Assembly: GCF_006345805.1 (NCBI RefSeq)
Contig: NC_042997.1
Span: 143,096,001-143,160,000 of the forward strand
Length of the DNA: 64,000 nucleotides
Direction: 5' to 3'
From: Octopus sinensis
Lineage: Eukaryota
The stretch's first letter is position 1. Each line of letters opens with the position of its first letter. Shown here piece after piece: positions 315 to 57,300 of the stretch. Made by a program: the position numbers and the translations under genes. The notes under the pieces are model-generated. The model saw only the letters and a program-made list of their open reading frames with translations, did no database searches and was not told where the DNA came from.

Positions 315-3300
315 GTCAGTACTTTGATAAGTCACCAATTTCTTATTTCCTTTGAATTTGATTTTTGCAATTTTTAAAAATACTTTTTATCTTTTACTTG
401 TTTCAGTCATAGACTGCAGCCATGCTGGGGCACTGTCTTGAAGGGTTCAGTCGATCAAATTGACCCCAGTACTTATTTTTTAAGTTTGGTACTTATTCTA
501 TCGATCTCTTTCATTAAACTGCTAAGTAATGGTGGTATAAACAATCCGATGCCAGTTGTCCAGTGGTGGCGGTGGGGTGGGAACAAACACAAAGACACAC
601 ACACACACATTTATATACAAGTTTCCATCTACCAAATTTACTAACAAGGTATTAGCCAGTCTGAAACTATAGTAGAAAACACTTGCCCAAGATGAGACTG
701 AACTTGAAACCAAGTGGTTGTGATGAAAAAAACTTCTTAACCACACAGCCATGCCTGCTCCATAAAATACAATACTAAACACATTTTAAAACTGATTCCT
801 AATTTTTACCGACTATTTAGTAATGAATCTAGCGAAGTTCTTTATTGCTTCTATTCCCTGTATATCTTGCCTTTATTTGTGATATCAAGTGAGAAAGGAA
901 GGCAATAAACCATTGATTTAGTGACCATATAATTAATTTACAAAGTGTTATATTATAGTTCTTTTATCATTATTATTATTTTTCTTGAACCCTAGGAGTC
1001 ATAAGGTTGGTTACCCTGTTTTTATGATATCTAAGTGACCAAGATAACAACATTCCTTCTGAATGGGATGCAGGTGTGTTTCAGGATTCAAAACCAGCAA
1101 GTTTACTTGAGGGGATGGGGGCAAGTTGATTACATCAACCACAGTACTTGACTGGTACTTAGTTTTATTGACCCTGAATGAGATGGAAAGCAAAGTTGAC
1201 CTCAGCAGCATTTGAACTCAGAACATAAAAGAGCTAGAAGAGACACCACTAAGCAATTTTTCTGACGTTTGTAATGGTTCTGCCAGCTGACTGCCTTAGC
1301 AACATTGAACTTTGTAATCAAAATTAAGATATCATAAATGAGACTGCCTGTGAGTAATTTTGTTTAAATTCTAAAATTACAAATTAAAATCAATTTGTGA
1401 TTTCAGTTTTTCTGAACATATTGCAGTATAAATTAATGTAATTCACTCCCAATTCACATGAGAAAATATTATTCATACTGTTTTATATTTTGCAGGGTTA
1501 ACGCTAGTACAACAACCAAAGCAATTGAGCCTTCTTCAGCAAGTGAACAGATACAGCCTTCGGTGCCTGAAGGTTCTGTCAGTCAAATACCAGGTAAGAA
1601 TTATTTCTAATTTTCCTTGTAACAATTGAGACGTTTGGAAATTTTTTTTTCTCATTTTACCTATTATCTTTTGCTTGTTTCAAGTCATTGGACTATGGCC
1701 ATGTTGGAACAAATCAAGCCCAGAATTTTTTTTAAGGTCTGAGACTTATTCTATTGATCTCTTTTGCAAAACTGCCAAGTTATGGGGACATAAATCAACA
1801 CCAGGTGTCAAGCAGTGACAGGAGGACAACCACACTGATACACACACACTTGTGATGGGCTTCCACACAGTTTCCATCTACCAGATTCACTCACAAGACA
1901 TTGGTCAGCCTGGAGCTATAGCAGAAGATGCCCAAGTTGCTGCCAATAGGATTGAACCTGATACCACATGGTTGCAAAGTAAGCTTTTCAGCCACACAGC
2001 CATGCATGCTATTTGAATTTCTGACTTACAAATCTTTTTATCTTTTTATTTTTTGTCTTTCCAGAAAGCTCTGTCCAGTCTCCCAGTGAAAAGTTAGTTA
2101 CTATATTAAATGATGATGAACAGGTTCCAATATCGGACACAGCTTCAAATGAACCAATGGTAAAGCTTATTGAAAGTGAAGAGCAACACCATCCTGCTGT
2201 TTTAAGCAGTTACATCACTTGCTGTCTTACATGCCCTTTGAAAAAAACTAGTACCAAGTATTCTAGCTCTCGGTCTTTAAAATGTCAGTTTTTGAAGAGA
2301 GTATCTGCCATTGCTACATCATCCAAAAAAGATTCCATTTCGTGGAAGGTTCCTCTTGTAAGTAAAATTGTTGAGGAGCCGTCTGCAGCTCATACGTCTG
2401 ACACTGATTTACTCACTCAAAGTATTTTGCATTCAGCAGATCGTAAATCTGACCAAGACATTGTTACACTAGAAACTGAAACAAGTTCGTCACATTCAAC
2501 CAAACCTGCAAATTTAACAGTTTCAGAACCAACAGCAAGTCTCTATCCTAGCTCTGAAGTGCACACAGCTTTAAAAAATGAAAAAACTAAACTAACAGAT
2601 CAGAAATCTTCACAGAGTTCTGTTGTAGCACAAGTAATTTCAAAGGATGAACATTCTGAGTCTGAATCTGTCTCAAGTTTACCAAAGGAGGAGGTGAATG
2701 AAACCAGTTTTGTCAGTGATATACCTTCTACGGAGCCAAAGACAGCTTCATCCAAAATGGCATCTTCAGGTGGAGTACCTGTTGATTTCCGGACTCCAGC
2801 CACTACACTTTATATCGAACCAAGTTCCACATCTGTAAAACAAGTTGAGCTAAATGGGGTCACATCCGAGCATTACGATTCCCATTTGTCCCCTTCCGAT
2901 CTTTTATTTTCAAAATCAGCATCTACTGCCTCCTTATTAGATAAACAAGATGTAACACTGGGTATCAAGTCTGACGACAAAGCTAAATTGAAGGAAACTG
3001 AGAGTAACATCATCACCACTGCAAGCCTTCCTAAAAGTGGGGAGGAAATGGAGCCAACTGGGGCAAATATTGTACCCACAAGAGTCTCTGACTCTCGTTC
3101 CAAAGCCGTAGTCCCAGAGTCTTCATCCATATCTATTTCATCAATGACACCCGAAGACAAAGTGGTGAAGGCTGTGAATATCACTGACCCTAAGGTAGAT
3201 AGTAAAGGTCGGCCTTTATACACATTAGTTCGTGTTGGTCTGCCACCAGCTGGAAAAAGAGAATCCGCTATAATGAGGCTGAATAACCGCATCAAAGCAC

Positions 3301-6300
3301 TGGAACTTAATGTCTCCCTCAGTAGTAGGTAAGTTGTTATTAACCATAAGGTTTTCATTTCTTCAATCTGAATTCATTTCTTGTTGTTGCTGTTTAGGCA
3401 CAAGTCAGCCCCCATTTGAATAGGTGTATGTGATCAAAGACATTCCAACCATAACCATCTTGTCTTTATTTTATTTTCAGACATGTACTATGGTCTGTTA
3501 TATCTATCATAGATTTTTAAGACAAAAAGGTATAGTTTGAACCAGAACTTTGGTTGCTGTTTCTAGCAGTCAAAGGTGCAGGACCTAGTTGTTAGTGTAT
3601 TGCACTCATAATTGTAAGATTAGGGTTTCAATTCCAGGGCTAGGTAGTGTATTGTGTTCTTGAGCAAAATATTTCATTTTGCAACAAAAGAATTTAGAAA
3701 TTTCAAGAGAACATGAAATAATTCTTTTTTCAAACGATAGATCTCAAAGCAAATAAAGCTATAAATAAGAGTGCAAATATTGGTTTAAAAAACCCCTTGG
3801 ATAGAAAAAGTCAGTCTAGCCATGAAATGCAACCCATGCCTTCTGTAAATATGATAGGTGTTCTACCATTTCACATTGCCCCAGTTCACTCAGCTGTTAA
3901 TGAGTTCCAGCAATAGCTGGGAAGATAATGCTGAGATGGACTGATGTCCCGATCAGTGGGAAAAGCATTGTAATATCAATCACTGATATGCTATGGAAAC
4001 CATATTAACCTTTGGCCTTATGAGTCCTCAGTCATGATAGACCTAGGTATTTCTAGCAGGCCAAGCAACCACATAGAGGCTTCTTCATTAGTTTGTTAAT
4101 GAATTGTCTGAGGTAATTTATGAATATTTATTTCTTTATTACCCATGGTGGGGCTAAACAGAGGGGACAAACAAGGACAGACAAAGGGATTAAGTTGATT
4201 ACATCGACTCCAGTACACAACTAGTACTTGATTTATCGACCCCCAAAAGGAGGAAAACCAAAGCCAACCTCAGTGGAATTTGAACTCAGAACAAAAGACA
4301 AACGAGATATCACTAAGCATTTTGCCTGGCCTGCTAACATTTCTGCCAGCTCGCCACCTTAGTAATTTATGAATACTGGTGGTCAAAAAGTGAATTTGTA
4401 AGAGATTAATGAAATTGCAGGAAATACCAAAGATTGCCATTTTTTATTTTGTCATTCTAAGGCATAAAAGGCTGACTTTACATATTCTGTAAATCTTAGA
4501 CTTGTTTCAGTCATTGGCCTGTGGCCATGCTAGGGCACCATGTTGAAATGATTTAGTTCAGGGGCTATCAACTATTTTTTAAGTTATCGTTATAGATATT
4601 TAAGATCTATCTCCCTTACAGGGCTGATTAGAAATTGGCTGCCGGTTCTTCGCGGGCCCCCCCCCCTCTTTTTACATTGTCTGTCTGGACTCCTCTTCCT
4701 ACTCCTCGACATGGCTATGCATACTTAAGCTAGTAACCTGCCTCACTCTTGATTCCGAATTCCTTTTGCCAAGTCTGTCCGTAAACGAAGTGATCCCAAG
4801 ATAAGAAATCTTTGAACTTTAATTCATCCGTATCTCTATTTATTATTATTATTTATTAATTATTATTATTCTGATCCCCCTAGTCGCCACTCTGTTTACT
4901 ATTTCAGCCTCGCCTCGTTTTTGCATATTCTGTATAATTCACTAGTTATCGTTATAGATATTTAAGATCTATCTCCCTTACAGGGCTGATTAGAAATTGG
5001 CTGCCGGTTCTTCGCGGGCCCCCCCCCCTCTTTTTACATTGTCTGTCTGGACTCCTCTTCCTACTCCTCGACATGGCTATGCATACTTAAGCTAGTAACC
5101 TGCCTCACTCTTGATTCCGAATTCCTTTTGCCAAGTCTGTCCGTAAACGAAGTGATCCCAAGATAAGAAATCTTTGAACTTTAATTCATCCGTATCTCTA
5201 TTTATTATTATTCTGATCCCCCTAGTCGCCACTCTGTTTACTATTTCAGCCTCGCCTCGTTTTTGCATATTCTGTATAATTCACTAGTTATCGTTATAGA
5301 TATTTAAGATCTATCTCCCTTACAGGGCTGATTAGAAATTGGCTGCCGGTTCTTCGCGGGGTTTCTCTCCCCCTCTTTTTACATTGTCTGTCTGGACTCC
5401 TCTTACTCCTCGACATGGCTATGCATACTTAAGCTAGTAACCTACCTCACTCTTGATTCCGAATTCCTTTTGCCAAGTCTGTCCGTAAACGAAGTGATCC
5501 CAAGATAAGAAATCTTTGAACTTTAATTCATCCATATCTCTATTTATTATTATTATTTATTAATTATTATTATTCTGATACCCCTAGTCGCCACTCTGTT
5601 TACTATTTCAGCCTCGCCTCGTTTTTGCATATTCTGTATAATTCACTAGTTATCGTTATAGATATTTAAGATCTATCTCCCTTACAGGGCTGATTAGAAA
5701 TTGGCTGCCGGTTCTTCACGGGGTTTCTCTCCCCCTCTTTTTACATTGTCTGTCTGGACTCCTCTTCCTACTCCTCGACATGGCTATGCATACTTAAGCT
5801 AGTAACCTGCCTCACTCTTGATTCCGAATTCCTTTTGCCAAGTCTGTCTGTAAACGAAGTGATCCCAAGATAAGAAATCTTTGAACTTTAATTCATCCGT
5901 ATCTCTATTTATTATTATTATTTATTAATTATTATTATTCTGATCCCCCTAGTCGCCACTCTGTTTACTATTTCAGCCTCGCCTCGTTTTTGCATATTCT
6001 GTATAATTCACTAGTTATCGTTATAGATATTAAGATCTATCTCCCTTACAGGGCTGATTAGAAATTGGCTGCCGGTTCTTCGCGGGCCCCCCCCCCTCTT
6101 TTTACATTGTCTGTCTGGACTCCTCTTCCTACTCCTCGACATGGCTATGCATACTTAAGCTAGTAACCTGCCTCACTCTTGATTCCGAATTCCTTTTGCC
6201 AAGTCTGTCCGTAAACGAAGTGATCCCAAGATAAGAAATCTTTGAACTTTAATTCATCCGTATCTCTATTATTATTATTATTTATTAATTATTATTATTC

Positions 6301-9300
6301 TGATCCCCCTAGTCGCCACTCTGTTTACTATTTCAGCCTCGCCTCGTTTTTGCATATTCTGTATAATTCACTAGTTATCGTTATAGATATTTAAGATCTA
6401 TCTCCCTTACAGGGCTGATTAGAAATTGGCTGCCGGTTCTTCGCGGGCCCCCCCCCCCTCTTTTTACATTGTCTGTCTGGACTCCTCTCCTACTCCTCGA
6501 CATGGCTATGCATACTTAAGCTAGTAACCTGCCTCACTCTTGATTCCGAATTCCTTTTGCCAAGTCTGTCCGTAAACGAAGTGATCCCAAGATAAGAAAT
6601 CTTTGAACTTTAATTCATCCGTATCTCTATTATTATTATTATTTATTAATTATTATTATTCTGATCCCCCTAGTCGCCACTCTGTTTACTATTTCAGCCT
6701 CGCCTCGTTTTTGCATATTCTGTATAATTCACTAGTTATCGTTATAGATATTTAAGATCTATCTCCCTTACAGGGCTGATTAGAAATTGGCTGCCGGTTC
6801 TTCGCGGGGTTTCTCTCCCCCTCTTTTTACATTGTCTGTCTGGACTCCTCTTCCTACTCCTCGACATGGCTATGCATACTTAAGCTAGTAACCTGCCTCA
6901 CTCTTGATTCCGAATTCCTTTTGCCAAGTCTGTCCGTAAACGAAGTGATCCCAAGATAAGAAATCTTTGAACTTTAATTCATCCGTATCTCTATTTATTA
7001 TTATTATTTATTAATTATTATTATTCTGATCCCCCTAGTCGCCACTCTGTTTACTATTTCAGCCTCGCCTCGTTTTTGCATATTCTGTATAATTCACTAG
7101 TTATCGTTATAGATATTTAAGATCTATCTCCCTTACAGGGCTGATTAGAAATTGGCTGCCGGTTCTTCACGGGGTTTCTCTCCCCCTCTTTTTACATTGT
7201 CTGTCTGGACTCCTCTTCCTACTCCTCGACATGGCTATGCATACTTAAGCTAGTAACCTGCCTCACTCTTGATTCCGAATTCCTTTTGCCAAGTCTGTCT
7301 GTAAACGAAGTGATCCCAAGATAAGAAATCTTTGAACTTTAATTCATCCGTATCTCTATTTATTATTATTATTTATTAATTATTATTATTCTGATCCCCC
7401 TAGTCGCCACTCTGTTTACTATTTCAGCCTCGCCTCGTTTTTGCATATTCTGTATAATTCACTAGTTATCGTTATAGATATTTAAGATCTATCTCCCTTA
7501 CAGGGCTGATTAGAAATTGGCTGCCGGTTCTTCGCGGGGTTTCTCTCCCCCTCTTTTTACATTGTCTGTCTGGACTCCTCTTCCTACTCCTCGACATGGC
7601 TATGCATACTTAAGCTAGTAACCTGCCTCACTCTTGATTCCGAATTCCTTTTGCCAAGTCTGTCCGTAAACGAAGTGATCCCAAGATAAGAAATCTTTGA
7701 ACTTTAATTCATCCGTATCTCTATTTATTATTATTATTTATTAATTATTATTATTCTGATCCCCCTAGTCGCCACTCTGTTTACTATTTCAGCCTCGCCT
7801 CGTTTTTGCATATTCTGTATAATTCACTAGTTATCGTTATAGATATTTAAGATCTATCTCCCTTACAGGGCTGATTAGAAATTGGCTGCCGGTTCTTCGC
7901 GGCGCTCCCGCCCTACCCACCCCCACCACCAATACCGGATATCTCTATTTTGCTCCAACTATACCGGATGTCGTTTCTCCCACCATTATAGGTGTCTACT
8001 CTTTGAACCCCCCTCTTCAATACGCTATTTCACCATGCATTACCCCTCTCTCGATATCCTACGTTCTACTTGCCTAGAACCTGTCCTCTGAACCACCCCT
8101 CCCGCTGGTGCTCCCCTATATTTCTGCACCCCCACCACCACCATTATAGGTGTCTACTCTTTGAACCCCCCTCTTCAATACGCTATTTCACCATGCATTA
8201 CTCCTCTCTCGATATCCTACGTTCTACTTGCCTAGAACCTGTCCTCTGAACCACCCCTCCCGCTGGTGCTCCCCTATATTTCTGCACCCCCCCCCATAAA
8301 AAAAGCACCATCCGAACGTGGCCGATGCCAGACCCCTCTGGCACCTGTGCAGGTGGCACGTAAAAAACACCCACTACACTCGCGGAGTGGTTGGCGTTAG
8401 GAAGGGCATCCAGCTGTAGAAACACTGCCAGACTAGACTGGAGCCTGGGGCAGTCCCGAGCTCTCCAGACCCCGGTCGAAACCGTCCAACCCGTGCTAGC
8501 GCGGAAAACGGACGTTAAACGATGATGATGATGATGATGAAACCCCTTTGATTATTTTATTTTATTTTTGGTGGACCCCCCCCCCCCCCCGCAATAACCA
8601 TTCAATGTTTTTTTTTTCTTTTTCACACATTCACTTGTGTAGATTGAACTATATAAAATGTTAAAGAAAGGAACTGAGCTGTTTCTTGCAATACATACAT
8701 CTGAAGTGGAATCTTTTTAGGGGCCCTTAAAATACTATTGTAGATGTCCCATTTACTATTTTGTTGCATGGACACCCAAAAATTTTATATGGACCCTCTG
8801 GGGCCATATTGGACCCTGGTTGAGACCCACTGATTGAGTTGAAGAAATCGCCCCCAGTACTTATTTTTTAAGTCTGGTACTTATTCTATCGGTTTCTTTG
8901 CTGAACCGCTAAGTTATGGAGATGTAAATGAATCAACAATAGCTGTGTGGGGTACACACACACACAATGTATGTATATATGTATATATGTATATATATGC
9001 AACTGGTTTCCAGACACTATATATCTATTACATTCACTCATAAGGCTTTGGTCAACTCAGGGCTACTGTAGGGAATCACTTGCCCAAGGTGCCATGCAGT
9101 GAGACTGCACCCAAAGCCACATTGTTGCAAAGTGAGCTTCTTGACCACAAAGCCATTCCTGTGACTAATATTTTGGGGAATTTATTTGGTGGTAAAGAAT
9201 GGTCAGTTGCTGAACATTGGTAACATTAAGGACTGTCAATTAAACCTTTTGGTTAGAAGTGAAATACCCTGACTTTTTATTAAACTGTAAACTTTTCTCT

Positions 9301-12300
9301 CTGGCAGATTTCTGGATGAGTTGAGTCAACGATATCGCAAACAGTCAGAAGAAATGATGCATTTTCTAAACAAAACAGTGGCACGTCTTGGAAATGTAAC
9401 AAAAAAGACTCAGGAAACGGTTGGTACCATTTTTCAGATTTTTTTTTGAAACATCATCATTGATTATCCATTAAATAATTTGTTTGATTGTTAATTATTG
9501 AACAATTCCAGTCATCATCATCATTTAACGTCTGCTGTTCTGTGCTTGCATGGGTCAGGCAGGATTTGTTAAAACAGATTTTTCTGCAGCCACATGCCCT
9601 TTCTGTAACCAAGTCCCATTTGTTTCCAAGCCAAGTAATATTTTCCTGTAGCAAGACATGTTTTACATGGAAGACTGGAAACAAGCAACCTCACTAGTAT
9701 GATGCTGATACTCTCTTAGAATCATTGTCTGATGTCTAGATAAAGGTTTAAATATACATGCATGTACTTACACATACAAATATGTGTGTGTGTGTGCATA
9801 TATATCATGGCACTCCATCGGTTACAACAACGAGGGTTCCAGTTGATACGATCAATGGAACAGCCTGCTCATGAAATTAACATGCAAGTGGCTGAGCACG
9901 CCACAAGCACTTGTACACTTAGCGTAGTTCTCGGGGTGGGTTGGCGGGGTTCAGCATGACACAGAGTCTGACAAGGCTGGCCCTTTGGAATACAGGTACA
10001 ATAGAAACAGGAAGAAAGAGTGAGAGAAAGGTGTGATGAAAGAATACACCAGGGCTCGCTGCTGGCTTTCCAGACCTCAGTCAAACCATCCAACCCATGC
10101 CAATATGGAAAATGGATGTTAAACAATGACGATAATGAATTATTGGCATGTTAAAAAATTAAAATCAGTTGCTATATGTATACCATTTAACCATCTGTCA
10201 TTTCTAAATCTTCTTATATTATGTTATAAAATTAATACTTATCAATATCTATAAAGCTGAAATGCGAAAAAGTTGTTTGATTTCTTGGTTATTTGTCTCA
10301 TTTTGGGATGGAAACGGTTTAAGGGGTGGTAGATGGGGTCGGATTGGCGCCAAAATTTACACTGGGGCGTAAAATGGGGTGGGCAATGGTGTGAGGAGGG
10401 TTGCAAGTCGCTGGGGCTACCGTTTGGTTGCCATGGTGAGGAATATGGGAAAAATTGAGTTTTATGGGATAGACAGGTTGCACTGTTTGAATAATGGTGG
10501 CTTTTCGTGTTGCTGCAGGGGCTAGAGGCGGTTATCTTTAATTGTGGGTGTAAAAATTTGGGGGATGTTGGAAAGGGGGGTAAAGAAGAGGGCAATAAGA
10601 AGAACCAGGCAAAGAAGACAAACAAAAGGAGGGAAAAGGAGACAACACCACCACCAAAACCTGAACGAAGTATGGGTCAAAATAGCTAGTTTTATATTTC
10701 TTTCTTTATTGCCCACAGGGGGCTAAACATAGAGGGGACAGACAAAGGGATTAAGTCGATTACATTGATCCCTGTGCGTAACTGGTACTTATTTAATCAA
10801 CCCTGAAAGGATGAAAGACAAAGTCAACCTCCGTGGAATTTGAACTCAGAATGTAAAGGCAGGCCAAATACCACTAGGCATTTCGCCTGGTGTGCTAACG
10901 TTTCTGCCAGCTTGCTGCCTTATTTTATATTATACCTCTTAACTGTTTACCATTTGTAAATGTTTTTATATTCAGGTTCAGAAGCATGAAATACATCTCA
11001 CAATCTTGGAATCTAGACTAGACAACTTGACACTGGCAGTTTCTCAGCTCACTGAAAACATGGATAATTTAACAAGACAGGTAATTTTTTTTACTATTTG
11101 ATATTCTTTTATATTTTAATTAACAAATCAGAGTTACCTGCTGTGATCCTACCAATCCAGGGTGGTGGATTGGCTGAACTACTGCTAAGATGGTCAGGCA
11201 AAAAGCCTTGCAACATCTGTTTTATATATCAACACCACCTGTGAGAACAGTAGTACCGTGTTTTTTGACTCAAGTTGGCAGCCTTTCACTTAGATAAACA
11301 TAGAGAGGGAAGACATAGATGCAGGATTCATGCATTAGCAACCTTGATCAAGGTATAATAATGCAAATGGCAGAACCTCCATCTCCATATCTTTCTTTCT
11401 TTCTCTCTGTACAATTCTAGCTTCCAAGGGAGATAACTCTTATTGGTTTTATTTCCCTTCCATCATCATCGTTTAACATCCATCTATGTATATGCATGGG
11501 TAGGACGGATGACAGGAGCTGGCCAGGTAGTAAAAATACCCTAGGCTACTGTGTCTGTTTTGACAGGGATTTTACGGCTGGATGCCCTTCCTAATACCAA
11601 CCAGTCCGTAGAGTGGACTCAGTGCTTTTTACATGGCACTAGTACAGGCGAAGTTAGTTTTGGCATGATTTTTACAGCTGGATGCCCTTTCAAATGCCAA
11701 CCATGTTACAGTGTGGACTGGATGCTTCCTTTGTCACTGTAAATGTATTTTCGCCTCTGTTGGTACTATGGGGTACCATCTTTAACATCCATTTTCCATG
11801 CTGGCATTGGACAGATTAACAGGAACTGACGGGTCCTAAGACTGCATTGTATTCCAACACCTACTTTGGCATGGTTTCTATAGCTGCCTGTCCTTCCTAA
11901 CCCATTCACTTTACAGAGTCTTCTGGTTGTGTGTTTCATGGCATCAGTACTAATGAGGTCGCCATTAATAACATATTTTTTGGCAAATATAATGAATGAG
12001 AAACTTGTATTAATTTAATAAATATTTTTTTTAAAGTTAGTCTTCAACTAATTACTTTGAATAAAATGAAATTATAATTACTGTCCCTATGTAGTATTAT
12101 CTGATAGTGGAGGCGCAATGGCCCAGTGGTTAGGGCAGCGGACTCGCGGTCATAGGATCGCAGTTTCAATTCCCAGACCGGGCGTTGTGAGTGTTTATTG
12201 AGCGAAAACACCTAAAAGATCCACGAGGCTCCGGCAGGGGATGGTGGTGATCCCTGCTGTACTCTTTCACCACAACTTTCTCTCACTCTTACTTCCTGTT

Positions 12301-15300
12301 TCTGTTGTACCTGCATTTCAAGGGGCCGGCCTTGTCACTCTCTGTGTCATGCTGAATATCCCCGAGAACTACGTTAAGGGTGCACGTGTCTGTGGAGTGC
12401 TCAGCCACTTACACGTTAATTTCACGAGCAGGCTGTTCCGTTGATTCGGATCAACCGGAACCCTCATCGTCGTAACCGACGGAGTGCTTCCTCCATTATC
12501 TGATATTAACTGCAGCTGGAAAAAATTATATCCTAAACATTGTCATGTGACCAGTTTTTTACTGTTTTTTCTTTCTTTTCTTTTTACAGCTAACAGATCG
12601 CCAAGTGTTGTGGGCATCAATTGAAGTATTTATCCTTGCCTTAATATTTGTCGTCTGCCTTAGAAAAAGACAGCCCTCTTTACCACCTAATCTGGTGGCG
12701 AAGGTTTTAGATGATCTCCTTCAGACCCAACATTTTTCTCCTAATCGAAGACGTAATTCAGAATCTAATGTTAAACAGTCTTCCGTAAGCCATTGTGAAG
12801 TGGTTCGACAAAAAAGTGCAGATGACCTCAGTAAGTTCATTTAAGGTTTTTACTCTACAGAACAGGGAATCCTTTTTAACTCAACAATATTTGTAGTTTA
12901 TTTACAAGTGGGGTAACGACATTATTTCATTGAATGATTATAGAATTTTTCCTAAAGATTTCCTAAATAAGATAAATATAATCTTAAACCAGAGGTTAAA
13001 ATGGTCAGTACTGCCACCCCCACTTCCATTGGTGGGGTGGAAAAATCCAGTGAGGGGCATTAAAGTAGGGCAACAATGAATGAGGTGGCCAAAAAGGGTC
13101 GGTGGATGTAAAAGCAAACAAAATAAAGGGTTAATTAGGTTAAGTTTTATTTGGGACATACAGTTTTGAATTAGCTTCAGAAAGCGGGTGGTGGTGGTAG
13201 GGGCTAGGGCTGTGGCCTGGTTGCTGAGAGGGTAGCAGCCTGAAAAAGTATGGGAACCATTGTCTTAAATTATTCTGACCTATTTTAGTAGTATTGTCTT
13301 AGGAAAGTAAACTTTGAAGCTCAGCTGTAAATGGGTGACCCTGTGACAGAGTAGCCTTCCAATCAGTGGGGTGACATCGTTCGGAAACTAAAACAGTGCA
13401 AAGCGCATTGTGACCAGCGATGTATAACAATATTCTATAATCTGGTTGATCACATGATTTATATTCTATAAACCAAGTCAGGGATTAGCATTTCTGTCTC
13501 TTGTAAATATTAGAACTGGAATTTCTCTTTAATTGTTTATAAAATAAACAGACACATGACCTAGACCAGTGATGGGCAAACTATGGGGTGCATTGCTTTC
13601 TGAATGGCATATCTGCCAATTTTCCTTGAATGTTTTAATTGTGTGACCTGCCTGATGATGAACTGTCTCATGCAACCTGCTTCTCAAGAGGAAAATAAGT
13701 TGTCCATGTCTGAACTAGACCTTAATGATGGTTTTTTTTAAATCAAAAATTCAAATAAGATTAGTATTTTTGTAGTAATGTTGCAAAACGCAAATAATTT
13801 ATTAGTCTTATTGCAAATGTCTCTGCAGGAATTTTTGTTGTTGTTTCATTAGAATTTCCAAATTTTAAATTTCTAAGAGCCAGAGTCATGTGGATAAACC
13901 TCCAAAAACTATAGTGTGTATCTGATGAAGACGTTATTTAGTTAAAAGTACCATTAACTAAACTAAGTACCAGACAACTGTTATTTTGTTGCATCTTGCA
14001 CACACACACTGATTCTATTTCACTTCATTATTTTATTTATTATTTAGTTTACCATATAGCCTATTAACTAATCAATTTGATAAATTGTTCGGTCATTCAA
14101 TCAGTCAGCTAGATTTGTCAGTTTTTTCGTCACCATTCACCATCTCACCAATGACATGCCCGCAAACTTAGTTGATTGATTGATCAAACAATTAATCAAA
14201 TAGTTAAATGGTTAACCAATAAACAAATAAAGAAGTGTGCATGTGTTTATTATTGGTAGAATGACACTCCCGAGATACAACAAAGTTTACATAAAGAATC
14301 TTGCAAACCAAATCAAAAACTGTCAAGGCCATTCACTTAAGACATTTTATTCATTTCCTATGGTTTGTAAACAATTATTTTAGCTCAACCTGTTGTTATC
14401 CTTTCATTGCAGTTCATTCAAAAGCTGTACATATTGTGGAACCTACTACACCTTTCTTGCTTGGTCAGGTAAGTTGTCTTTTTTTATAAAACTAGAAATA
14501 TTTAAAATAAATAAAATGTTTAAATTAGAGTAACACATACTTTATTGCCATAAAATGTAAGCGAAGGAGTCTTTTTCAAAGTAACATGCTCAGTACAACT
14601 GTAACATTAAATCTGAGCATGAATTGACCCGTTCCAGGATAGCAAATTGGTGTATTAGTGTTGGATGAGTTACCTGTTCTAGTCCTTTGTATTCTGATAG
14701 TAACACCTGTACCAACACTGGCAGCAAGCTGTATTGGCCTTGAAGCACAGCCTTTTCCTTGGACAACAATTGGTAGTATGAAGGGAGGTGGTTTGCATGC
14801 ATGAACAACTGCCAGTCTTCCATAAAAAGAACTTGCCTCGGCTAGAAATAGCTACCAAATCTCACCCAAATTACAATTACAAAAAAGGACTCGTTGGAAA
14901 TAAGTAGTTCCATTTCCTAGATGGAAAAAAACAGACATGGTTGTAACTGATCCTACTGGATCGTGGTTGACTTAGGGCTAAACAAACAACAATCAAAAGA
15001 AGATGGTCATAAAAAAAGGCATATATAGAATGCCTGCTTAACCAACATATTTCAGAAAGGTTGTTTCAAATAATTACTGGAACATTCAATGAATGTAACT
15101 TGTAGTTATTTAAGTGAGCTTCTTAACCACACAGCTGAGTATTTTTGTTGCTTGAGTCAAATAGCCCAACAATTTAGTTTTCCCACGATACTGGGTTTGG
15201 AGCTATGGGGGTGATTAAGAAAAGTATTTAACTCTTTAGCATTTTAATTACTCTCTCAAATGCAATTTTTTTTTGTTCACATTGTTTTGAATTAATCATA

Positions 15301-16365
15301 CATTATCTTATGTCTTTGAGATTTTGATGTAATAATTTATTTTTACAATGACAGGGTAGAGTTAGTGTGAGAGACCAGATCTAGTCAGTTTGAACATAAA
15401 ACTAGTAAAATATTTTGGCTGGATATGGGCTGGTTTAAATGCAAAAGAGTTAGAAAAAGAATATTTTGAATAGTTGGTGGTTGAGGTGTTGATTGTGATA
15501 ATGAAATTCATTTTTCTCTTTTGTTTTTTTTTCATTCTTTTTCTCGCAGACGAAAGAAGGCAACAAAAAACGGAAGAAAAAGAAAAACCGATCAGTTGAT
15601 TTAAAAATGAGTAGTAGTAGTAAGGAAGGTCTTCCTAAAGAGAAGAGTGTTTCAACGACTCAACTGAATAGCGCTGGACTGTTATTCATGGGGCAACCAG
15701 TAGAAAGCAGCAGTTCTCCTGCCAGAGAAGTTATACATTACAAACAAATTAGGGAACGTGTGGAAGGGGAATCGGGGACTTCGGTTGGCAGTGTGTGTAG
15801 TAGTAATAGTAGTAGTAGTAATAATAATACTGGTGCGTATAGTATTGCAAGAGTAAAAGAGTGCAGTCATGATACAAATATTCGCATTTCATGCAGTAAG
15901 AGTGATCCAGACTTATATACAAGTGAAAACTCTGCGACAGCATTGTGTTGTTCTACTCATCTCTCAAATCATTCTACACCTCTTCCATCCACACAAACAT
16001 CTTTTTCTCTCCCTTCTTCTACTTCAAAAGTTCCACTCATGTGTTCAATCCCAAAGTCTTTCTCTTCTTCTTTGCCTGCTTCGGTGCCGGCAACACCATC
16101 AGCAGAACAATGTCAAATCTTCAACAGCACAAACAGTTTACTGAGAACAAACTTGATAACATATCCTATCAAACAGTCGTCCAGCCTTTCAGATCCTATA
16201 GTTGCTGGCAGTACTGGGCTGGTTAAAACAGTAACGGGAACACATTCCACTACATTCAGAAACAAATACAGATCTTTAGACGTTGGACAAAAAAATTCTT
16301 CAGAAAGAAAGAATGTTAATCGATGCCGCACTCAAGTTCCGTGTGACGGCTTCAGAAAGTTCTGA
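230..16365 (+). CDS. SUCO: SUN domain-containing ossification factor (SUCO/C1orf9/Osteopotentia, Slp1-like), 3' portion. join(230..314,1496..1593,2065..3328,9308..9419,10976..11080,12590..12830,14413..14468,15550..16365)
   Basis: All introns are GT-AG with matching phases (start 1; then 2,1,2,0,0,1,0). Spliced protein contains [39 protein letters not shown], the SUCO coiled-coil signature (human [40 protein letters not shown], from memory). This is followed by a TM helix (VLWASIEVFILALIFVVCL), HIVEP and a polybasic KKRKKKKK. The SUN domain itself lies upstream of the window. Confidence 0.93.
389..762 (-). mobile_element. tRNA-head SINE, abundant family
   Basis: Head GGAGCAGGCATGGCTGTGTGGTTAAG on the - strand; body repeated at 1655-2005, 17780-18150, 20955-21300, 25819-26310 (+) and 57290-57655. 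Confidence 0.8.
1496..1593 (+). CDS. SUCO: SUCO exon (VNASTTTKAIEPSS...SQIP)
   Basis: ttttgcag|G acceptor, CAG|gtaaga donor, open frame, phases 2 and 1. Confidence 0.85.
2065..3328 (+). CDS. SUCO: SUCO large Ser/Thr-rich exon ending at the start of the coiled coil (…[19 protein letters not shown])
   Basis: ORF 2157..3332 extends upstream to the ttccag acceptor; AG|gtaagt donor. Confidence 0.95.
4128..4361 (-). mobile_element. Second SINE family (head TAAGGTGGCGAGCTGGCAGAA…)
   Basis: Homologous copies at ~1100-1299, 10685-10925, 25230-25573 and 61420-61580 (+). Confidence 0.75.
4582..7902. repeat. Tandem array of ~360-bp monomer, 9 full copies plus a partial one
   Basis: Monomer starts at 4582, 4944, 5286, 5648, 6013, 6373, 6734, 7099, 7464 and 7829; near-identical copies, each with an internal (TAT)n tract. 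Confidence 0.98.
7981..8295. repeat. 158-bp tandem duplication
   Basis: CACCATTATAGGTGTC…TTTCTGCACCCCC at 7981 and 8139, one substitution seen. Confidence 0.95.
8298..8540 (+). mobile_element. 5'-truncated retroposon 3' tail ending in (GAT)n
   Basis: …GGTTGGCGTTAGGAAGGGCATCCAGCTGTAGAAAC…GGACGTTAAAC(GAT)6; older copies at 16890-17045 and 10060-10135; CpG-rich, so probably young. Confidence 0.8.
9308..9419 (+). CDS. SUCO: SUCO exon ([37 protein letters not shown])
   Basis: Conserved ELSQRYRKQ motif; ctggcag acceptor, gttggt donor. Confidence 0.95.
9810..10054 (-). mobile_element. SINE body and tail (same family as 12107-12494)
   Basis: Reverse complement aligns by eye with 12252-12487. Confidence 0.85.
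10976..11080 (+). CDS. SUCO: SUCO coiled-coil exon, 35 codons
   Basis: ttcag|GTT…CAG|gtaatt, phase 0-0, heptad-spaced Leu. Confidence 0.9.
12107..12494 (+). mobile_element. Young full-length tRNA-derived SINE with TSD
   Basis: A box TGGCCCAGTGG, B-box-like GTTTCAATTCC, perfect 11-bp TSD ATTATCTGATA (12096-12106 and 12495-12505). Confidence 0.9.
12590..12830 (+). CDS. SUCO: SUCO transmembrane exon (LTDRQVLWASIEVFILALIFVVCLRKRQ…)
   Basis: Long pyrimidine tract then ttacag; DRQ followed by a hydrophobic helix and a basic stop-transfer; A|gtaagt donor. Confidence 0.93.
13567..13712. mobile_element. hAT-type MITE
   Basis: CAGTGATGGGCAAACT … AGTTGTCCATGTCTG imperfect TIRs; TSD ACCTAGAC / AACTAGAC (7/8). 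Confidence 0.6.
14413..14468 (+). CDS. SUCO: SUCO small exon ((I)HSKAVHIVEPTTPFLLGQ)
   Basis: cattgcag acceptor, CAG|gtaagt donor, phase 1 to 0, IVEP motif. Confidence 0.85.
15232..15449. mobile_element. piggyBac-type MITE (degenerate copy)
   Basis: Reverse-oriented homologue of 23860-24070. Confidence 0.7.
15550..16365 (+). CDS. SUCO: SUCO last coding exon (TKEGNKKRKKKKKNR… Ser-rich tail to TGA)
   Basis: ttctcgcag acceptor in frame with ORF 15607..16365. AATAAA at 16519-16524 is a candidate poly(A) signal. Confidence 0.9.
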   Translation, partial: TKEGNKKRKKKKNRSVDLKMSSSSKEGLPKEKSVSTTQLNSAGLLFMGQPVESSSSPAREVIHYKQIRERVEGESGTSVGSVCSSNSSSSNNNTGAYSIARVKECSHDTNIRISCSKSDPDLYTSENSATALCCSTHLSNHSTPLPSTQTSFSLPSSTSKVPLMCSIPKSFSSSLPASVPATPSAEQCQIFNSTNSLLRTNLITYPIKQSSSLSDPIVAGSTGLVKTVTGTHSTTFRNKYRSLDVGQKNSSERKNVNRCRTQVPCDGFRKF

Positions 16366-54325: not shown

Positions 54326-57300
54326 ACATTTTTCCATCGTTTTTGATTTCACTTAAAATTAAATATTTCATGGTACATCTAATATTGTTCTCATATCATT
54401 ACCTTGAATCTAAGATTTCATAACTACTTTAATCACTTGAAATCTACGCTAAATTCAAATACCATGAACTGAACTTGTCAGGCTTTTTGAGCATTACATT
54501 CATCACAACCACATCCTTGTTCAATACCCATTCTCATATGGTTGTACCAAGACTTTGTAGTCAAAAGTTGAAGTCAGTAAAAATGCACAAATTCCATCTT
54601 AGTGTAAATTGCAATATAATGAGCTAAAAAATGTTCAGTTTCACAGATACTAGTTTGTTTGCCTCTATGAAGGAGGATCTAAACCTTTCAGGTTACATTC
54701 ACTTAAGTTTTATTCCATCAAAGCTTTAATATCGAAAATGAAACGTTATGCATCTGATTTTTAGTTTCATAAACAGAAGAGTCAGAGTTGGAATCAATGG
54801 TACCAAAGGGTTTTTGTGTACAGACTCCGCAGCCCTCGCTTACACCCAATTTTCTTCTTCCTTACAACATAAAAAGGGAAGATCTTGAATTTAAATGTAT
54901 TAAAACTGAGTACACTACCTTGCAAGGCAACAGTTTCAGTTGTAGAATATATAATTGGATTACTGGTTGCTGCAATTCCAGTGGTCCCAATTATTGTCCC
55001 ACTACTAGCAGCTGCAGAACCAGAATTACTACTCTGATCTGCTGCTGGCACTGTAGGTGAGGTTGTCAGTGTTCCGGGTGTGGCTGTAAACTCTGCAGAT
55101 GTAGCTTGTAGTGGGGATTCAGCTGCAGTAGCGACTGTAGAGAATAACCCACCACCAGTCTCTAGCTTGTTTATGTCACCATTTGCAAAGTGGAAGTTTC
55201 CTGGGAAAATATTAAAATGATAGATAGTAAGAGAGAAAAGGTGCTTTAACACAAGAATATACCTTATAAACAAAACAATGTTACTAGAGAAATTTTGTTA
55301 ATAATTTCCAAACAAGCATATTAAAAACCACAGCCATTAATGCTTAAAAGGAAATGTATTTCCCATAGGTTTCTGTGTAACATGCAATCCAAAAAAGGCT
55401 TCATGTTATGACCAAGATTTTCCAGAACACAATGTTTCCACAATGCAGGGGATGCCTGTACTAAGAACCTACTACCTCATGTCTTCTTCCACTGCCATTT
55501 ATAGGTTTAAAGCAAAATTCATTGTTACAGCAAAATGCTGGTTACAAACCTATAAATTAAACTTAGAGAAACTTCTGCACAATTGTGGTTACAGTTTAAA
55601 AAAAAAAAAAGACATTACAAAACAAAAATGCCATTAAGAAAGATTATTGTTTTTCTGGGTTTTTTTTTCTTTTTCACAATTTTTTTTTAATGTGAATCCA
55701 ATTAAGCTAGAACTTTCTGAAGCTCAGATTTACATATTTTCTGTAAAGAGAATATACAACAAAGGTCTGCTATTTTGACCACACCAGCAAGGATAAAAGG
55801 TTACGTCAAACCAGGTGAGATTTGAACTTGGATCACAAAGAGACAACCAAATATCATTTTATCTGCCATTTACTGCTCTGATTATATTTAGAGTATTACA
55901 AAAGATTATAGAACTATCTCATGAAAGCTATACCAACTCCCTACCAAAACAATATAATATACACATTTTTTTCTTGTTTAAATAATTAGATCTTTGTTTT
56001 AAATGATCACAAGTTAGAATAAGGCAAATTAAAAAGAGAAATAAGTCGTTATCAATAATAAATGAAAATATCTCAATAACATGGCCACAGCTCATAAGCT
56101 GAAACTAGAATCTATCAATCAATCAACAAAAGTTTTAAATGTAAGTACCAAATAGGAATAAAATGCACAAGCATAAAGTAATACAAACGTTCACTGGAGG
56201 GTAGGAGTTGCATAACACTGGTAACTTAAGAAATAGTAATATTTATTTTGGAAAATGAATATTTTTAAGGAAGCCAATATGAGAAAATTGGTCAGTTGTC
56301 TTGCTTCAGCTCTAACTCAAATCACTTTATGACAATCCAGTTTCATTCCAGTTTTTTGATCACTTAATCCAGAATAGCTTTCCCCTAAAACTAGAATAAT
56401 AAGCTTGTGAGCAGCCATTTCCATCTTCAAATTACTTAAATCAGAGTTTCCTACATTCTATATGACTATCAATTGTCTAAGCCAGCAGGTATTTGCATCA
56501 CTCTGCATCTGAATGCAGCACATTTTTGTAAATCTTCAGCAAAGTAGTATTGTCAGCTACAGGCTTTTCAAGGTTAGGGAGTGATTGATACAGTTGATAA
56601 TCAGTCAAAACACTGGTAAACTGTCATTTGCAGGAGAAATATAGGCAGAGAGATAGGAGTAAAGCTTGACCAAGTGATTAGTATGGAATGCTGGGTTACT
56701 GAGCCTACACAGTGGGACAGATACGCAGCAAAATAGCTCAGGAATAGAGAGCATTGAAGTAGGAAAGGGAAGGAGAAAAAAGAGCTAGAGAGCAGATAGT
56801 ACACATGGATCAGAGGTTGTAGTGGGTTCGTTACTTTTGCAAATCAGTAGAATCACTTCTATTTGGATGCAGATTCAGGATTTTTGCACGAGTGTCCCAG
56901 CTATAGAATTTCCTGGAGCTGCATTAAGCATCATCAAGCAATAAAATCCTTTCTGATCTTTAAGGGGAATGTTGTTTTGGGACTAGCAGTTTTGCATGTG
57001 AGATCTTCAGAAAAGATATGCAAGACATAACAGTTACAGCAATTGTAAAGCTTTTAGTGAAGGGGTAGGGATTTGTTCATGACAATACATAGTGAGATAC
57101 AAGATTATTTCCTTTATTAGTAGTGATTGCATAAATTAGTTTTTTTCTTCTGAGTCTAAACACTATTGAATGAAAATGAATGTGGCCATCATCACACTCT
57201 ACATGTTTGCCTTGCCTACAAGGAATTACTATTACAATTTTTTTTTACTTATTACAAAATTACATATATATATATATATATAGCTGTATTTGTTTGTCAT

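What the first reader, a model, noticed from the sequence alone, without database searches (positions are those of the whole stretch)
4551..8840. Three-level nested insertion; possible composite VNTR retroposon (SVA-like architecture)
Seen: a SINE is split by a hAT MITE with an 8-bp TSD. About 22 bp inside the MITE, the sequence switches to a 360-bp array, then ~390 bp of unique and duplicated DNA, then a 5'-truncated, CpG-rich retroposon tail ending (GAT)n. MITE sequence resumes at 8541, with none between array and tail. Inference: sharing one breakpoint suggests one ~3.96 kb retrotranscript (tandem repeat plus LINE-mobilisable tail). That would parallel the hominid SVA design, and I do not know of it in cephalopods. 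No clear TSD borders the inner insert, so two independent events or Helitron/satellite capture remain possible.
Basis: partly seen in the sequence, partly recalled or inferred. Interest (0 to 1): 0.72.

Follow-up and report, generated by a model that had tools for sequence, protein, structure and literature searches.

The report
Satellite-plus-SINE-tail chimeric insert in octopus MITE
An octopus intron holds a SINE split by a small DNA transposon, which is split in turn by one clean 3.96-kb insert (tandem array, spacer, truncated SINE tail) that looks like a single LINE-driven retro-insertion, but no second copy was found, so an SVA-like family is not shown.

Summary
The nested anatomy is real. 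A CORE-type SINE (~4480-9165) is split by a ~316-bp hAT-type MITE with an 8-bp target-site duplication (TSD; 4551-4558 / 8833-8840). The MITE is split after its 23rd base by a 3,958-bp insert (4582-8539). The insert has three unrelated parts: 9.2 copies of a 365-bp monomer, a 393-bp C-rich linker holding two 154-bp copies, and 244 bp of a 5'-truncated octopus SINE ending in (GAT)6.

An uninterrupted relative of the MITE from another octopod is collinear with the joined MITE halves across the breakpoint. So the array is not native to the MITE, no MITE sequence was lost, and any TSD is at most 1-3 A. All three insert parts keep their CpGs (observed/expected 0.74-0.90), against 0.10 for the MITE arm and 0.31 for the window.

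Best reading: one LINE-mediated retro-insertion of a chimeric template. Either it was one RNA already, or the reverse transcriptase jumped between RNAs. Both 154-bp copies end at the same base and each is followed by 4 filler bases, which favours jumping.

The SVA-like family claim is unproven. No second copy of the monomer or linker was found in anything I could search, and the source genome itself was not searchable. Verdict: partly supported, moderate interest.

The parts
4480..4550 (-). Outer CORE-type SINE, left piece (the element's 3' part; it is in minus orientation)
   Evidence: Aligns to intact copies in the window and in O. vulgaris up to the break.
4551..4558 (.). Target-site duplication of the MITE, copy 1 (ATTTAGTT)
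   Evidence: This site is present once in intact SINE copies. It matches 8833-8840 at 7 of 8 positions.
4559..4581 (+). hAT-type MITE, left 23 bp (terminal inverted repeat CAGGGGCTATCAAC at 4559-4572)
   Evidence: One of only two matches to the terminal-repeat pattern in the window, 0.12 expected. Collinear with the uninterrupted MITE in L007.
4582..7902 (+). Tandem array of 9 full 365-bp monomers plus 74-83 bp. Strand is given as that of the attached SINE tail.
   Evidence: TRF period 365, 97-98% matches. Monomers differ by at most 7 substitutions. m4=m8 and m7=m9 are identical, and divergence is lowest at a lag of 4 units. CpG observed/expected 0.90. No relative anywhere else searched.
7903..7979 (+). 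Linker, unique C-rich part
   Evidence: No similarity to the monomer, the tail, the rest of the window or the loci.
7980..8137 (+). Linker, 154-bp copy 1 (7980-8133) followed by 4 filler bases ACCA
   Evidence: Position-by-position comparison at an offset of 158 bp; TRF period 158, 99%.
8138..8295 (+). Linker, 154-bp copy 2 (8138-8291) followed by 4 filler bases CCCC. It ends at the same base (...TTTCTGCACCCCC) as copy 1.
8296..8539 (+). 5'-truncated SINE copy (about 1.3 head units, core and 3' region) ending in (GAT)6G at 8521-8539
   Evidence: 83-88% identical to O. vulgaris copies from 8296/8300 onward. Five of the seven O. vulgaris copies extended upstream carry a shared 5' leader, and these copies carry 1-3 further ~62-bp head units; this copy has neither. 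CpG observed/expected 0.88.
8540..8832 (+). hAT-type MITE, right 293 bp (terminal inverted repeat at 8819-8832)
   Evidence: 74% identical over 172 bp to the MITE in L007/L008 and collinear with it across the junction. CpG observed/expected 0.10.
8833..8840 (.). Target-site duplication of the MITE, copy 2 (ATTGAGTT)
8841..9165 (-). Outer CORE-type SINE, right piece (central microsatellite and 5' part)
   Evidence: Similarity to many window and O. vulgaris copies runs to about 9161-9174.

Best explanation
The 3,958 bp at 4582-8539 is one LINE-mediated retro-insertion into a ~316-bp hAT-type MITE, which had itself inserted into an older CORE-type SINE in an intron of a SUCO-like gene.

Proposed sequence of events:
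1. A LINE endonuclease nicked the bottom strand in the MITE's T6/A3-4 run (5'-GGGGTTT/TAAAAAA-3').
2. The free 3'-OH primed reverse transcription on an RNA ending in the SINE 3' region and (GAU)n tail.
3. After 244 nt of SINE, the cDNA continued into an unrelated C-rich RNA and then into at least 3.3 kb of 365-bp satellite transcript.
4. Synthesis stopped in mid-monomer, and the cDNA was joined to the MITE with essentially no target-site duplication.

I favour a one-off chimera. It was assembled either by template jumps of the reverse transcriptase or from a single read-through transcript of a source locus where a truncated SINE lies downstream of the satellite. In the template-jump version the enzyme landed twice on the same RNA 3' end, ...CUGCACCCCC, which gives the two same-ended 154-bp copies, each followed by 4 filler bases.

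The array existed as a tandem repeat at its source, because the copy number is not an integer in any phase. It later gained, or already had, a 4-monomer segmental duplication.

Shown: the nesting, the clean single breakpoint, the SINE identity of the tail, and the shared CpG-rich state. Inferred: target-primed reverse transcription, a single event, template jumping. No function is implied; it is most likely a neutral young intronic insertion.
For: - Clean single breakpoint. The joined MITE halves (23 + 293 bp) are collinear with an uninterrupted ~300-bp relative from another octopod. Window, minus strand...TAATCAAAGGGGTTT|TAAAAAATAGTTGATAGCCCCTG. L007...TAATCAAAAGGGTCTGTAAAATGAATCATTGAGAACACCTAG.
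- The right edge is exactly the (GAT)6G end of a SINE whose copies are abundant in O. vulgaris.
- The SINE part is 5'-truncated. It lacks the 5' leader shared by five of the seven O. vulgaris copies compared, so it very probably could not be transcribed on its own.
- Array, linker and tail are unrelated to one another. All three keep their CpGs (observed/expected 0.90, 0.74, 0.88), against 0.10 for the MITE arm, 0.17-0.30 for the flanks and a window median of 0.24.
- Most of the few single-base differences among monomers are CpG transitions, as expected for a young resident of a methylated gene body.
- The array has 9 units plus about 80 bp, so at least one end cuts a pre-existing array.
- Both 154-bp linker copies end at ...TTTCTGCACCCCC. 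Each is followed by 4 unmatched bases, and the second abuts the SINE break.
- Chimeras built by single or double template switches during LINE reverse transcription, including a tripartite one with a SINE, are documented (PMC2104539).
- In mollusc SINEs with tandem-repeat tails, TSDs often cannot be found, for example 4 of 34 elements in one family (PMC4758252). Their absence here is therefore weak evidence against retrotransposition.
Against: - There is no TSD longer than 1-3 A, so LINE involvement is inferred only from the tail sitting at the boundary.
- No partner LINE with this 3' end was identified.
- The template-jump reading rests on one coincidence, roughly 2% by position and judged after the fact. 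The 158-bp duplication could be ordinary slippage.
- With no second copy or source locus available, a one-off chimera cannot be told apart from a member of a family.
- My attempt to calibrate TSDs on the O. vulgaris copies and the other window copy gave no clear TSDs. Those copies are old (76-87% identity), so the test was uninformative.
Confidence: 0.6

Rival explanations
1. The insert is a copy, 5'-truncated within its VNTR, of a multi-copy composite non-autonomous retroposon. Its modules would be a satellite-like VNTR, a linker and a SINE-derived 3' end. It would be transcribed by Pol II and mobilised in trans by the SINE's partner LINE, as SVA or LAVA is by L1.
For: - Same single-breakpoint and tail-at-boundary evidence as above.
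- Modular build with a central tandem array and a LINE-recognisable 3' end.
- Every monomer carries two T5 runs on the sense strand. A Pol III transcript could not cross it, so a Pol II origin would be required, as for SVA.
- All modules are equally CpG-rich and young-looking.
- The tail belongs to a SINE subfamily that differs at shared diagnostic positions from all 11 O. vulgaris copies compared. This fits a lineage-specific active source.
Against: - No second copy of the monomer, the linker or either junction was found: in the other 60 kb of the window, in 80 kb of O. vulgaris, in 5.8 billion and 1.84 billion protein sets (which do contain ORFs from octopus SINEs and MITEs), or in the JGI, IMG/VR and GTDB scans. 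All of these searches have low power for this question.
- No TSD.
- No defined 5' module.
- The unit is 365 bp and AT-rich, unlike the 35-50-bp GC-rich VNTR of SVA.
Confidence: 0.15
2. Two or more independent events landed at the same point. For example, a 5'-truncated SINE inserted first, and the array plus linker arrived later exactly at its 5' junction. Alternatively the order was reversed, with the same endonuclease-preferred T6/A4 site used twice.
For: - There is no TSD around the whole insert.
- The site is an AT-run, of the kind that apurinic-type endonucleases prefer.
- The three modules are unrelated to each other.
Against: - The second event would have to hit one bond out of several hundred, leaving no MITE or SINE sequence on the wrong side.
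- The array plus linker has no recognisable mobilisation signal of its own.
- All modules show the same undecayed CpG state.
Confidence: 0.12
3. DNA-level capture. A genomic fragment, or circular DNA shed from a satellite, that already contained array, linker and SINE was copied or ligated into a double-strand break in the MITE. Possible routes are filler DNA in end-joining, abortive gap repair after hAT excision, or Helitron-type capture.
For: - No TSD and no loss of target bases.
- hAT elements are known to acquire filler DNA by template switching during gap repair (general knowledge, not tested here).
- Satellites commonly shed circular DNA (general knowledge, not tested here).
Against: - The right edge coincides to the base with the end of the SINE's (GAT)n tail. 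A random DNA breakpoint would do that in only about 1 in 1000 cases.
- The ends are AGTTAT... and ...GATGATG, not the Helitron 5'-TC...CTRR-3'. The insert lies between A and A, not between A and T.
- The MITE relative shows that the break is not at an excision footprint.
Confidence: 0.08
4. Assembly artefact. The array length or the joins were produced by mis-assembly of repeats.
For: - Identical monomers (m4=m8, m7=m9) and long C homopolymers are hard to assemble.
Against: - Both outer joins fall at the same MITE position, and the MITE and SINE halves fit their relatives base for base. A chimeric join would not do that.
- Monomer variants are ordered in a coherent 4-unit pattern.
Confidence: 0.03

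Closest known systems
SVA / LAVA / PVA / FVA (hominoid VNTR composite retrotransposons)
   Same: Non-autonomous and non-coding. A central tandem-repeat block is joined to a 3' module that ends in the tail used by the partner LINE. The block is too long, and too rich in T-runs, for Pol III. 5' truncation within the VNTR also occurs in SVA.
   Different: Those are multi-copy families with fixed module junctions, a 5' hexamer/Alu-like module, 35-50-bp GC-rich VNTR units, a poly(A) tail and L1-type TSDs. They are reported as specific to hominoids (PMC4432496, PMC7353768). Here there is one copy, a 365-bp AT-rich unit, a (GAT)n tail, no TSD and no 5' module. There is no sequence homology.
Bipartite and tripartite chimeric retrocopies made by template switching during LINE reverse transcription (U6-L1 and related in mammals; WEIRD/Mg-SINE/MGL in Magnaporthe)
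   Same: The 3' part is a 5'-truncated LINE or SINE copy with its tail. It is fused head-to-tail to copies of unrelated RNAs. Double jumps are documented (PMC2104539, PMC4476161). The filler bases and repeated landing on one RNA 3' end seen here fit this mechanism.
   Different: Known 5' partners are short, abundant RNAs, and the best-documented cases are flanked by TSDs (14 bp in the fungal tripartite element). Here the 5' partner is at least 3.3 kb of satellite, and there is no TSD.
5' transduction or read-through mobilisation of flanking DNA by L1 and SVA
   Same: Upstream flanking DNA is carried into a new locus because transcription starts upstream of the element and the element's 3' end is what the LINE machinery recognises.
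   Different: It is not described, to my knowledge, for a promoter-less SINE fragment carrying a satellite. The source locus was not found.
MITE-associated satellites of molluscs (pearl/CvA-type elements of bivalves; from my own knowledge)
   Same: A tandem array sits between the terminal inverted repeats of a small DNA transposon in a mollusc.
   Different: In those families the repeats are part of the element. Here a related MITE without any array is collinear across the breakpoint, so the array is a later insertion.

Membership tests
hAT-type MITE (the middle layer) | Short terminal inverted repeats of the CAG(G/T)G...CAAC type | tested here: met
   CAGGGGCTATCAAC and CAGTGGGTCTCAAC match 11/14. 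They are the only two matches in the window, 0.12 expected.
hAT-type MITE (the middle layer) | 8-bp target-site duplication | tested here: met
   ATTTAGTT and ATTGAGTT. The site is single in intact copies of the host SINE.
hAT-type MITE (the middle layer) | Small non-coding element present as other copies | tested here: met
   An uninterrupted ~300-bp relative occurs in two Logan octopod contigs (L007, L008), 74% identical over 172 bp. Only this one related locus was recovered, as two near-identical contigs.
VNTR composite retrotransposon (SVA-like) | Modules of different origin with a central tandem-repeat block | tested here: met
   Array, linker and SINE tail are mutually unrelated.
VNTR composite retrotransposon (SVA-like) | 3' end carries the tail used by an autonomous LINE | tested here: inconclusive
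   It ends in the SINE's own 3' region and (GAT)6. The partner LINE was not identified.
VNTR composite retrotransposon (SVA-like) | Many copies at different loci sharing the same module junctions | tested here: inconclusive
   No second copy in any searchable data. The source genome itself could not be searched.
VNTR composite retrotransposon (SVA-like) | Target-site duplications flanking each copy | tested here: not met
   The flanks are ...TTTTTTA and AAACCCC.... At most 1-3 A are shared.
VNTR composite retrotransposon (SVA-like) | Defined 5' module or promoter, and Pol II transcripts spanning all modules | not testable with these tools
   The 5' end is in mid-monomer. No RNA data were available.
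Template-switch chimeric retrocopy | 3' part is a 5'-truncated LINE or SINE copy with its tail | tested here: met
   The tail spans 8296-8539. Five of the seven O. vulgaris copies extended upstream carry a shared 5' leader, which is missing here.
Template-switch chimeric retrocopy | 5' part(s) are copies of other cellular RNAs, fused in the same orientation at RNA ends, often with extra bases | tested here: inconclusive
   Two 154-bp copies end at the same base, each followed by 4 filler bases. It is unknown whether the linker or array exist as RNAs.
Template-switch chimeric retrocopy | Whole chimera flanked by one TSD | tested here: not met
   No TSD beyond 1-3 A. TSDs are often unidentifiable for mollusc SINEs (PMC4758252).
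Helitron carrying a satellite | 5'-TC...CTRR-3' termini, a 3' hairpin, and insertion between A and T | tested here: not met
   The insert starts AGTTAT, ends GATGATG, and lies between A and A. No 3' hairpin was looked for.
MITE with native internal satellite (pearl/CvA-like) | The array is part of the element's family structure | tested here: not met
   The related MITE has no array and reads through the breakpoint.

The most novel reading that the evidence does not exclude
This is a recently inserted copy of an active composite retroposon family of octopods, with a satellite-type VNTR, a linker and a SINE-derived 3' end, mobilised in trans by the SINE's partner LINE. It would be the first SVA-type design reported outside hominoid primates. 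It would also be a route by which satellite arrays are seeded at new sites by retrotransposition.
Probability: 0.15. Interest if true: 0.65.

Novelty: new member of a known kind. Interest (0 to 1): 0.36.

Why it matters
If it is a one-off, it is still a clean worked example. The clean breakpoint and the tail at the boundary point to a stringent, tandem-repeat-tailed LINE/SINE system of a cephalopod copying kilobases of satellite RNA to a new chromosomal site in a single step. That is one way tandem arrays can be dispersed. It also gives a three-step relative dating series (SINE, then MITE, then chimera) inside one intron.

If a family exists, VNTR composite retroposons would no longer be a hominoid peculiarity. 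Octopus, with its large and active SINE/LINE load, would then offer an independent system for studying how such composites arise. Either outcome can be settled with one BLAST against the source assembly.

Tried and rejected
- Other copies in the window. BLASTN (word size 9) and nhmmer found none of the monomer, linker or MITE.
- External DNA scans. Exact 20-23-mers of the monomer and the MITE end gave 0 hits in JGI metagenomes (2 scans), IMG/VR (2) and GTDB genomes (1). These collections are not expected to hold octopus DNA.
- Protein trick. Stop-free translations of the monomer, both internal junctions and the linker were concatenated and searched against 5.8 billion proteins, with no hit. 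An exhaustive HMMER search of the same query plus the MITE frames gave only one hit, which was MITE-derived. That hit was the useful one.
- SINE-junction ORF (117 aa). It returned seven O. vulgaris "hypothetical proteins" covering the SINE part only; none extended into the linker.
- Orthologous empty site. The neighbouring SUCO-like exon found no octopus ortholog. The best hits were about 40% identical (an ENA metagenome contig and a Logan contig), too distant to use.
- About 80 kb of O. vulgaris around SINE-derived ORFs (L002-L005) had no monomer, linker or MITE. This sample is far too small to exclude a family.
- MITE arms showed no inverted similarity beyond the terminal repeats, so symmetry could not be used to test completeness.
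- Rfam and tRNA scans of 4300-9100 found nothing relevant. The array is not a 5S, snRNA or tRNA gene cluster.
- Monomer, linker and tail compared pairwise on both strands scored no better than shuffles.
- TSD habit of the SINE family. Exact-match scans of the O. vulgaris copies and the other window copy showed no clear TSDs, but those copies are too old for the test to be informative.
- Partner LINE. An 842-aa ORF next to a SINE copy in L005 has no Pfam domain. An RT-like fragment in L004 (863-1450, minus strand; judged by eye from an FADDAAL motif, not scanned against Pfam) is not joined to a SINE-type tail.
- Literature. Full-text searches for SINE and monomer strings gave 0 papers. No paper on octopus satellites or composite retroposons turned up. 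The O. vulgaris repeat-annotation paper holds no consensus library as text.

Full report
**Setting.** The window is octopod DNA. Its SINE families recur in Octopus vulgaris chromosomes (GCA_951406725.2). The feature lies in an intron of a plus-strand gene resembling SUN-domain ossification factor. A large exon sits at 2025-3329 and a small one at about 9307-9423. No close ortholog of that exon was in the protein collection; the best hits were about 40% identical. I therefore could not reach the orthologous locus in another octopus.

**Outer layers.** The host repeat is a roughly 400-bp SINE with a CORE-like segment, lying in minus orientation from about 4480 to 9165.
- Intact copies in the window (373-541, 57290-57421 and others) and in O. 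vulgaris read straight through the break and carry the site ATTTAGTY once.
- In the split copy the site appears twice: ATTTAGTT at 4551-4558 and ATTGAGTT at 8833-8840.
- Just inside these lie CAGGGGCTATCAAC (4559-4572) and the reverse complement of 8819-8832, CAGTGGGTCTCAAC. They match 11/14 and are the only two matches to that pattern in 64 kb, against 0.12 expected.

**The inner insert.** It begins at 4582, 23 bp inside the MITE.
- Array. Tandem Repeats Finder reports a 365-bp period with 97-98% matches up to 7902. Cutting at a fixed phase gives nine full monomers (342-365 bp) plus 74-83 bp. Monomers differ by 0-7 substitutions. Pairs m4/m8 and m7/m9 are identical. Divergence is lowest at a lag of four units, which indicates a four-monomer segmental duplication. 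Most of the few single-base differences are CpG transitions.
- Linker, 7903-8295. It is 41% C. After 77 unique bases there is a 154-bp segment (7980-8133), the four bases ACCA, the same 154-bp segment again (8138-8291, one mismatch), and the four bases CCCC.
- Tail, 8296-8539. This is a copy of a SINE that is very common in O. vulgaris, with about 15 hits in 80 kb at 83-88% identity. It ends in (GAT)6G. The O. vulgaris copies compared carry 1-3 further head units of about 62 bp, and five of the seven extended upstream also share a 5' leader.
- MITE sequence resumes at 8540.

**Is the array part of the MITE?** This was the main alternative, and I could test it. An exhaustive HMMER search with translated frames of the array, linker and MITE gave one hit, a 79-residue ORF matching a MITE frame. 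Its two Logan contigs (L007 and L008, from runs SRR11869391 and SRR11869384) share SINE families with the window and with O. vulgaris, so they are octopod. They carry an uninterrupted element of about 300 bp with related inverted ends.

Aligned globally, the joined window MITE (23 + 293 = 316 bp) is collinear with that element across the junction. Shown on the minus strand:
- Window: ...TAATCAAAGGGGTTT | TAAAAAATAGTTGATAGCCCCTG
- L007: ...TAATCAAAAGGGTCTGTAAAATGAATCATTGAGAACACCTAG

Four things follow:
- The MITE is complete without the array.
- The 3,958 bp sit between adjacent MITE bases in a T6/A3-4 run.
- No MITE sequence was lost.
- Any target duplication is at most one to three A.

**One event or several?** Four observations point to one event.
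1. Everything lies at one bond of the MITE, with no MITE or SINE sequence on the wrong side of any module.
2. The right edge is, to the base, the microsatellite end of a SINE. Target-primed reverse transcription produces exactly this; a random DNA breakpoint would not.
3. The three modules are unrelated to one another, yet all keep their CpGs. Observed/expected is 0.90, 0.74 and 0.88, against 0.10 for the MITE arm, 0.17-0.30 for the flanks, 0.31 for the whole window and a median of 0.24 for 1-kb windows. In a CpG-depleted gene body this marks all three as recent arrivals.
4. The SINE fragment lacks the 5' leader shared by most full-length copies, so it very probably needed a foreign 5' part or a foreign template in order to be copied at all.

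Against a single LINE event there is only the missing TSD. For mollusc SINEs with tandem-repeat tails, TSDs are often not identifiable; one family showed them in 4 of 34 elements (PMC4758252). My own calibration on old O. vulgaris copies was uninformative.

**How was the chimera made?** There are two versions.
- A single transcript already joined array, linker and SINE. It could come from a family, or from one source locus by read-through. Each monomer has two T5 runs on the sense strand, so such an RNA would have to be made by Pol II.
- The reverse transcriptase jumped between RNAs.

The linker favours the second version. Both 154-bp copies end at the same base (...TTTCTGCACCCCC). Each is followed by four unmatched bases, and the second abuts the SINE break. 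That is what two successive landings on the 3' end of one RNA species would give. By position alone, a plain tandem duplication would end within 4 bp of the SINE junction only about 2% of the time, though this was judged after the fact. Single and double template switches during LINE reverse transcription, including a tripartite chimera that contains a SINE, are documented (PMC2104539).

The copy number is not an integer in any phase. The array was therefore already tandem at its source and was cut at one end, which fits incomplete reverse transcription.

**The SVA comparison.** The design resemblance is real: a central tandem block, a LINE-recognisable 3' module, non-coding sequence, and a length Pol III could not transcribe. 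The features that make SVA and LAVA a family were either not met or not testable:
- There is no TSD.
- There is no 5' module.
- There is no second copy sharing the junctions.

Every search I could run was negative. Their power is low, however. The source genome was not searchable, and 80 kb of a different species is a negligible sample. The literature held here describes VNTR composite retrotransposons as specific to hominoids (PMC4432496, PMC7353768), and I found nothing comparable for cephalopods. I therefore put the family reading at about 0.15.

**Verdict.** The best-supported account is a single, young, LINE-mediated insertion of a three-part chimera into a MITE, which itself lies inside a SINE. 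It is probably a one-off. It is a new instance of a known kind of event in a group where such events have not been described. A BLAST of the monomer, the linker and the junctions against the source assembly would settle the family question at once.

Noticed in passing
L003 3682-4496 (O. vulgaris OX597840.1): A 5.9-copy tandem array with a 137-bp period and 97% identity. Each unit is the 3' half of the same SINE family together with its own (GAT)n tail, joined head to tail. It is either a SINE-derived mini-satellite or the product of serial template jumps.
   Followed up: partly
L002 10011-10400, L005 2691-3050, 9966-10280 and 13829-14210, L004 363-586 and 10099-10400: The tail SINE family has a variable number (about 1-4) of ~62-bp head units (...GGTGGCACRTAAAAAGCACCATCCGAACGTGGCCG...), so the SINE itself has a VNTR-like 5' region. 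All 11 O. vulgaris copies compared share CA at two positions where the window copy has CG, so the window copy belongs to a different subfamily.
   Followed up: partly
window 2025-3329, ~9307-9423, 12551-12841, 15505-16362 (+): Exons of a gene resembling SUN-domain ossification factor (motif ...AIMRLNNRIKALELNVSLSSR / FLDELSQRYRKQ...). No octopus ortholog was returned from the protein collection; the best hits were about 40% identical.
   Followed up: partly
L001 (ENA ERZ21867824 ctg120844l, 290 kb): A contig in a metagenome assembly encodes a 40%-identical homolog of the window's large exon but shares none of the octopus SINEs. It is apparently eukaryotic DNA from a distant relative or host, sitting in a metagenome.
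   Followed up: no
window 8574-8590, 8284-8295 and each C-type monomer (e.g. 4647-4656): Long C homopolymers (9-15 C) occur in the MITE arm, at the linker/SINE junction and in four of nine monomers. The related MITE in L007 has no such run at the matching place. These are either real expansions or homopolymer length errors in the assembly.
   Followed up: no
window 11461-11760 (-): A SINE copy with its conserved core (GGTTGG..TTAGGAAGGGCATCCAGC) present twice in tandem, giving a dimeric variant.
   Followed up: no
L004 863-1450 (-): An open frame containing an FADDAAL-type motif. It is a fragment of a LINE reverse transcriptase (judged by eye, not scanned against Pfam) and is not joined to a (GAT)n-type tail.
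   Followed up: no
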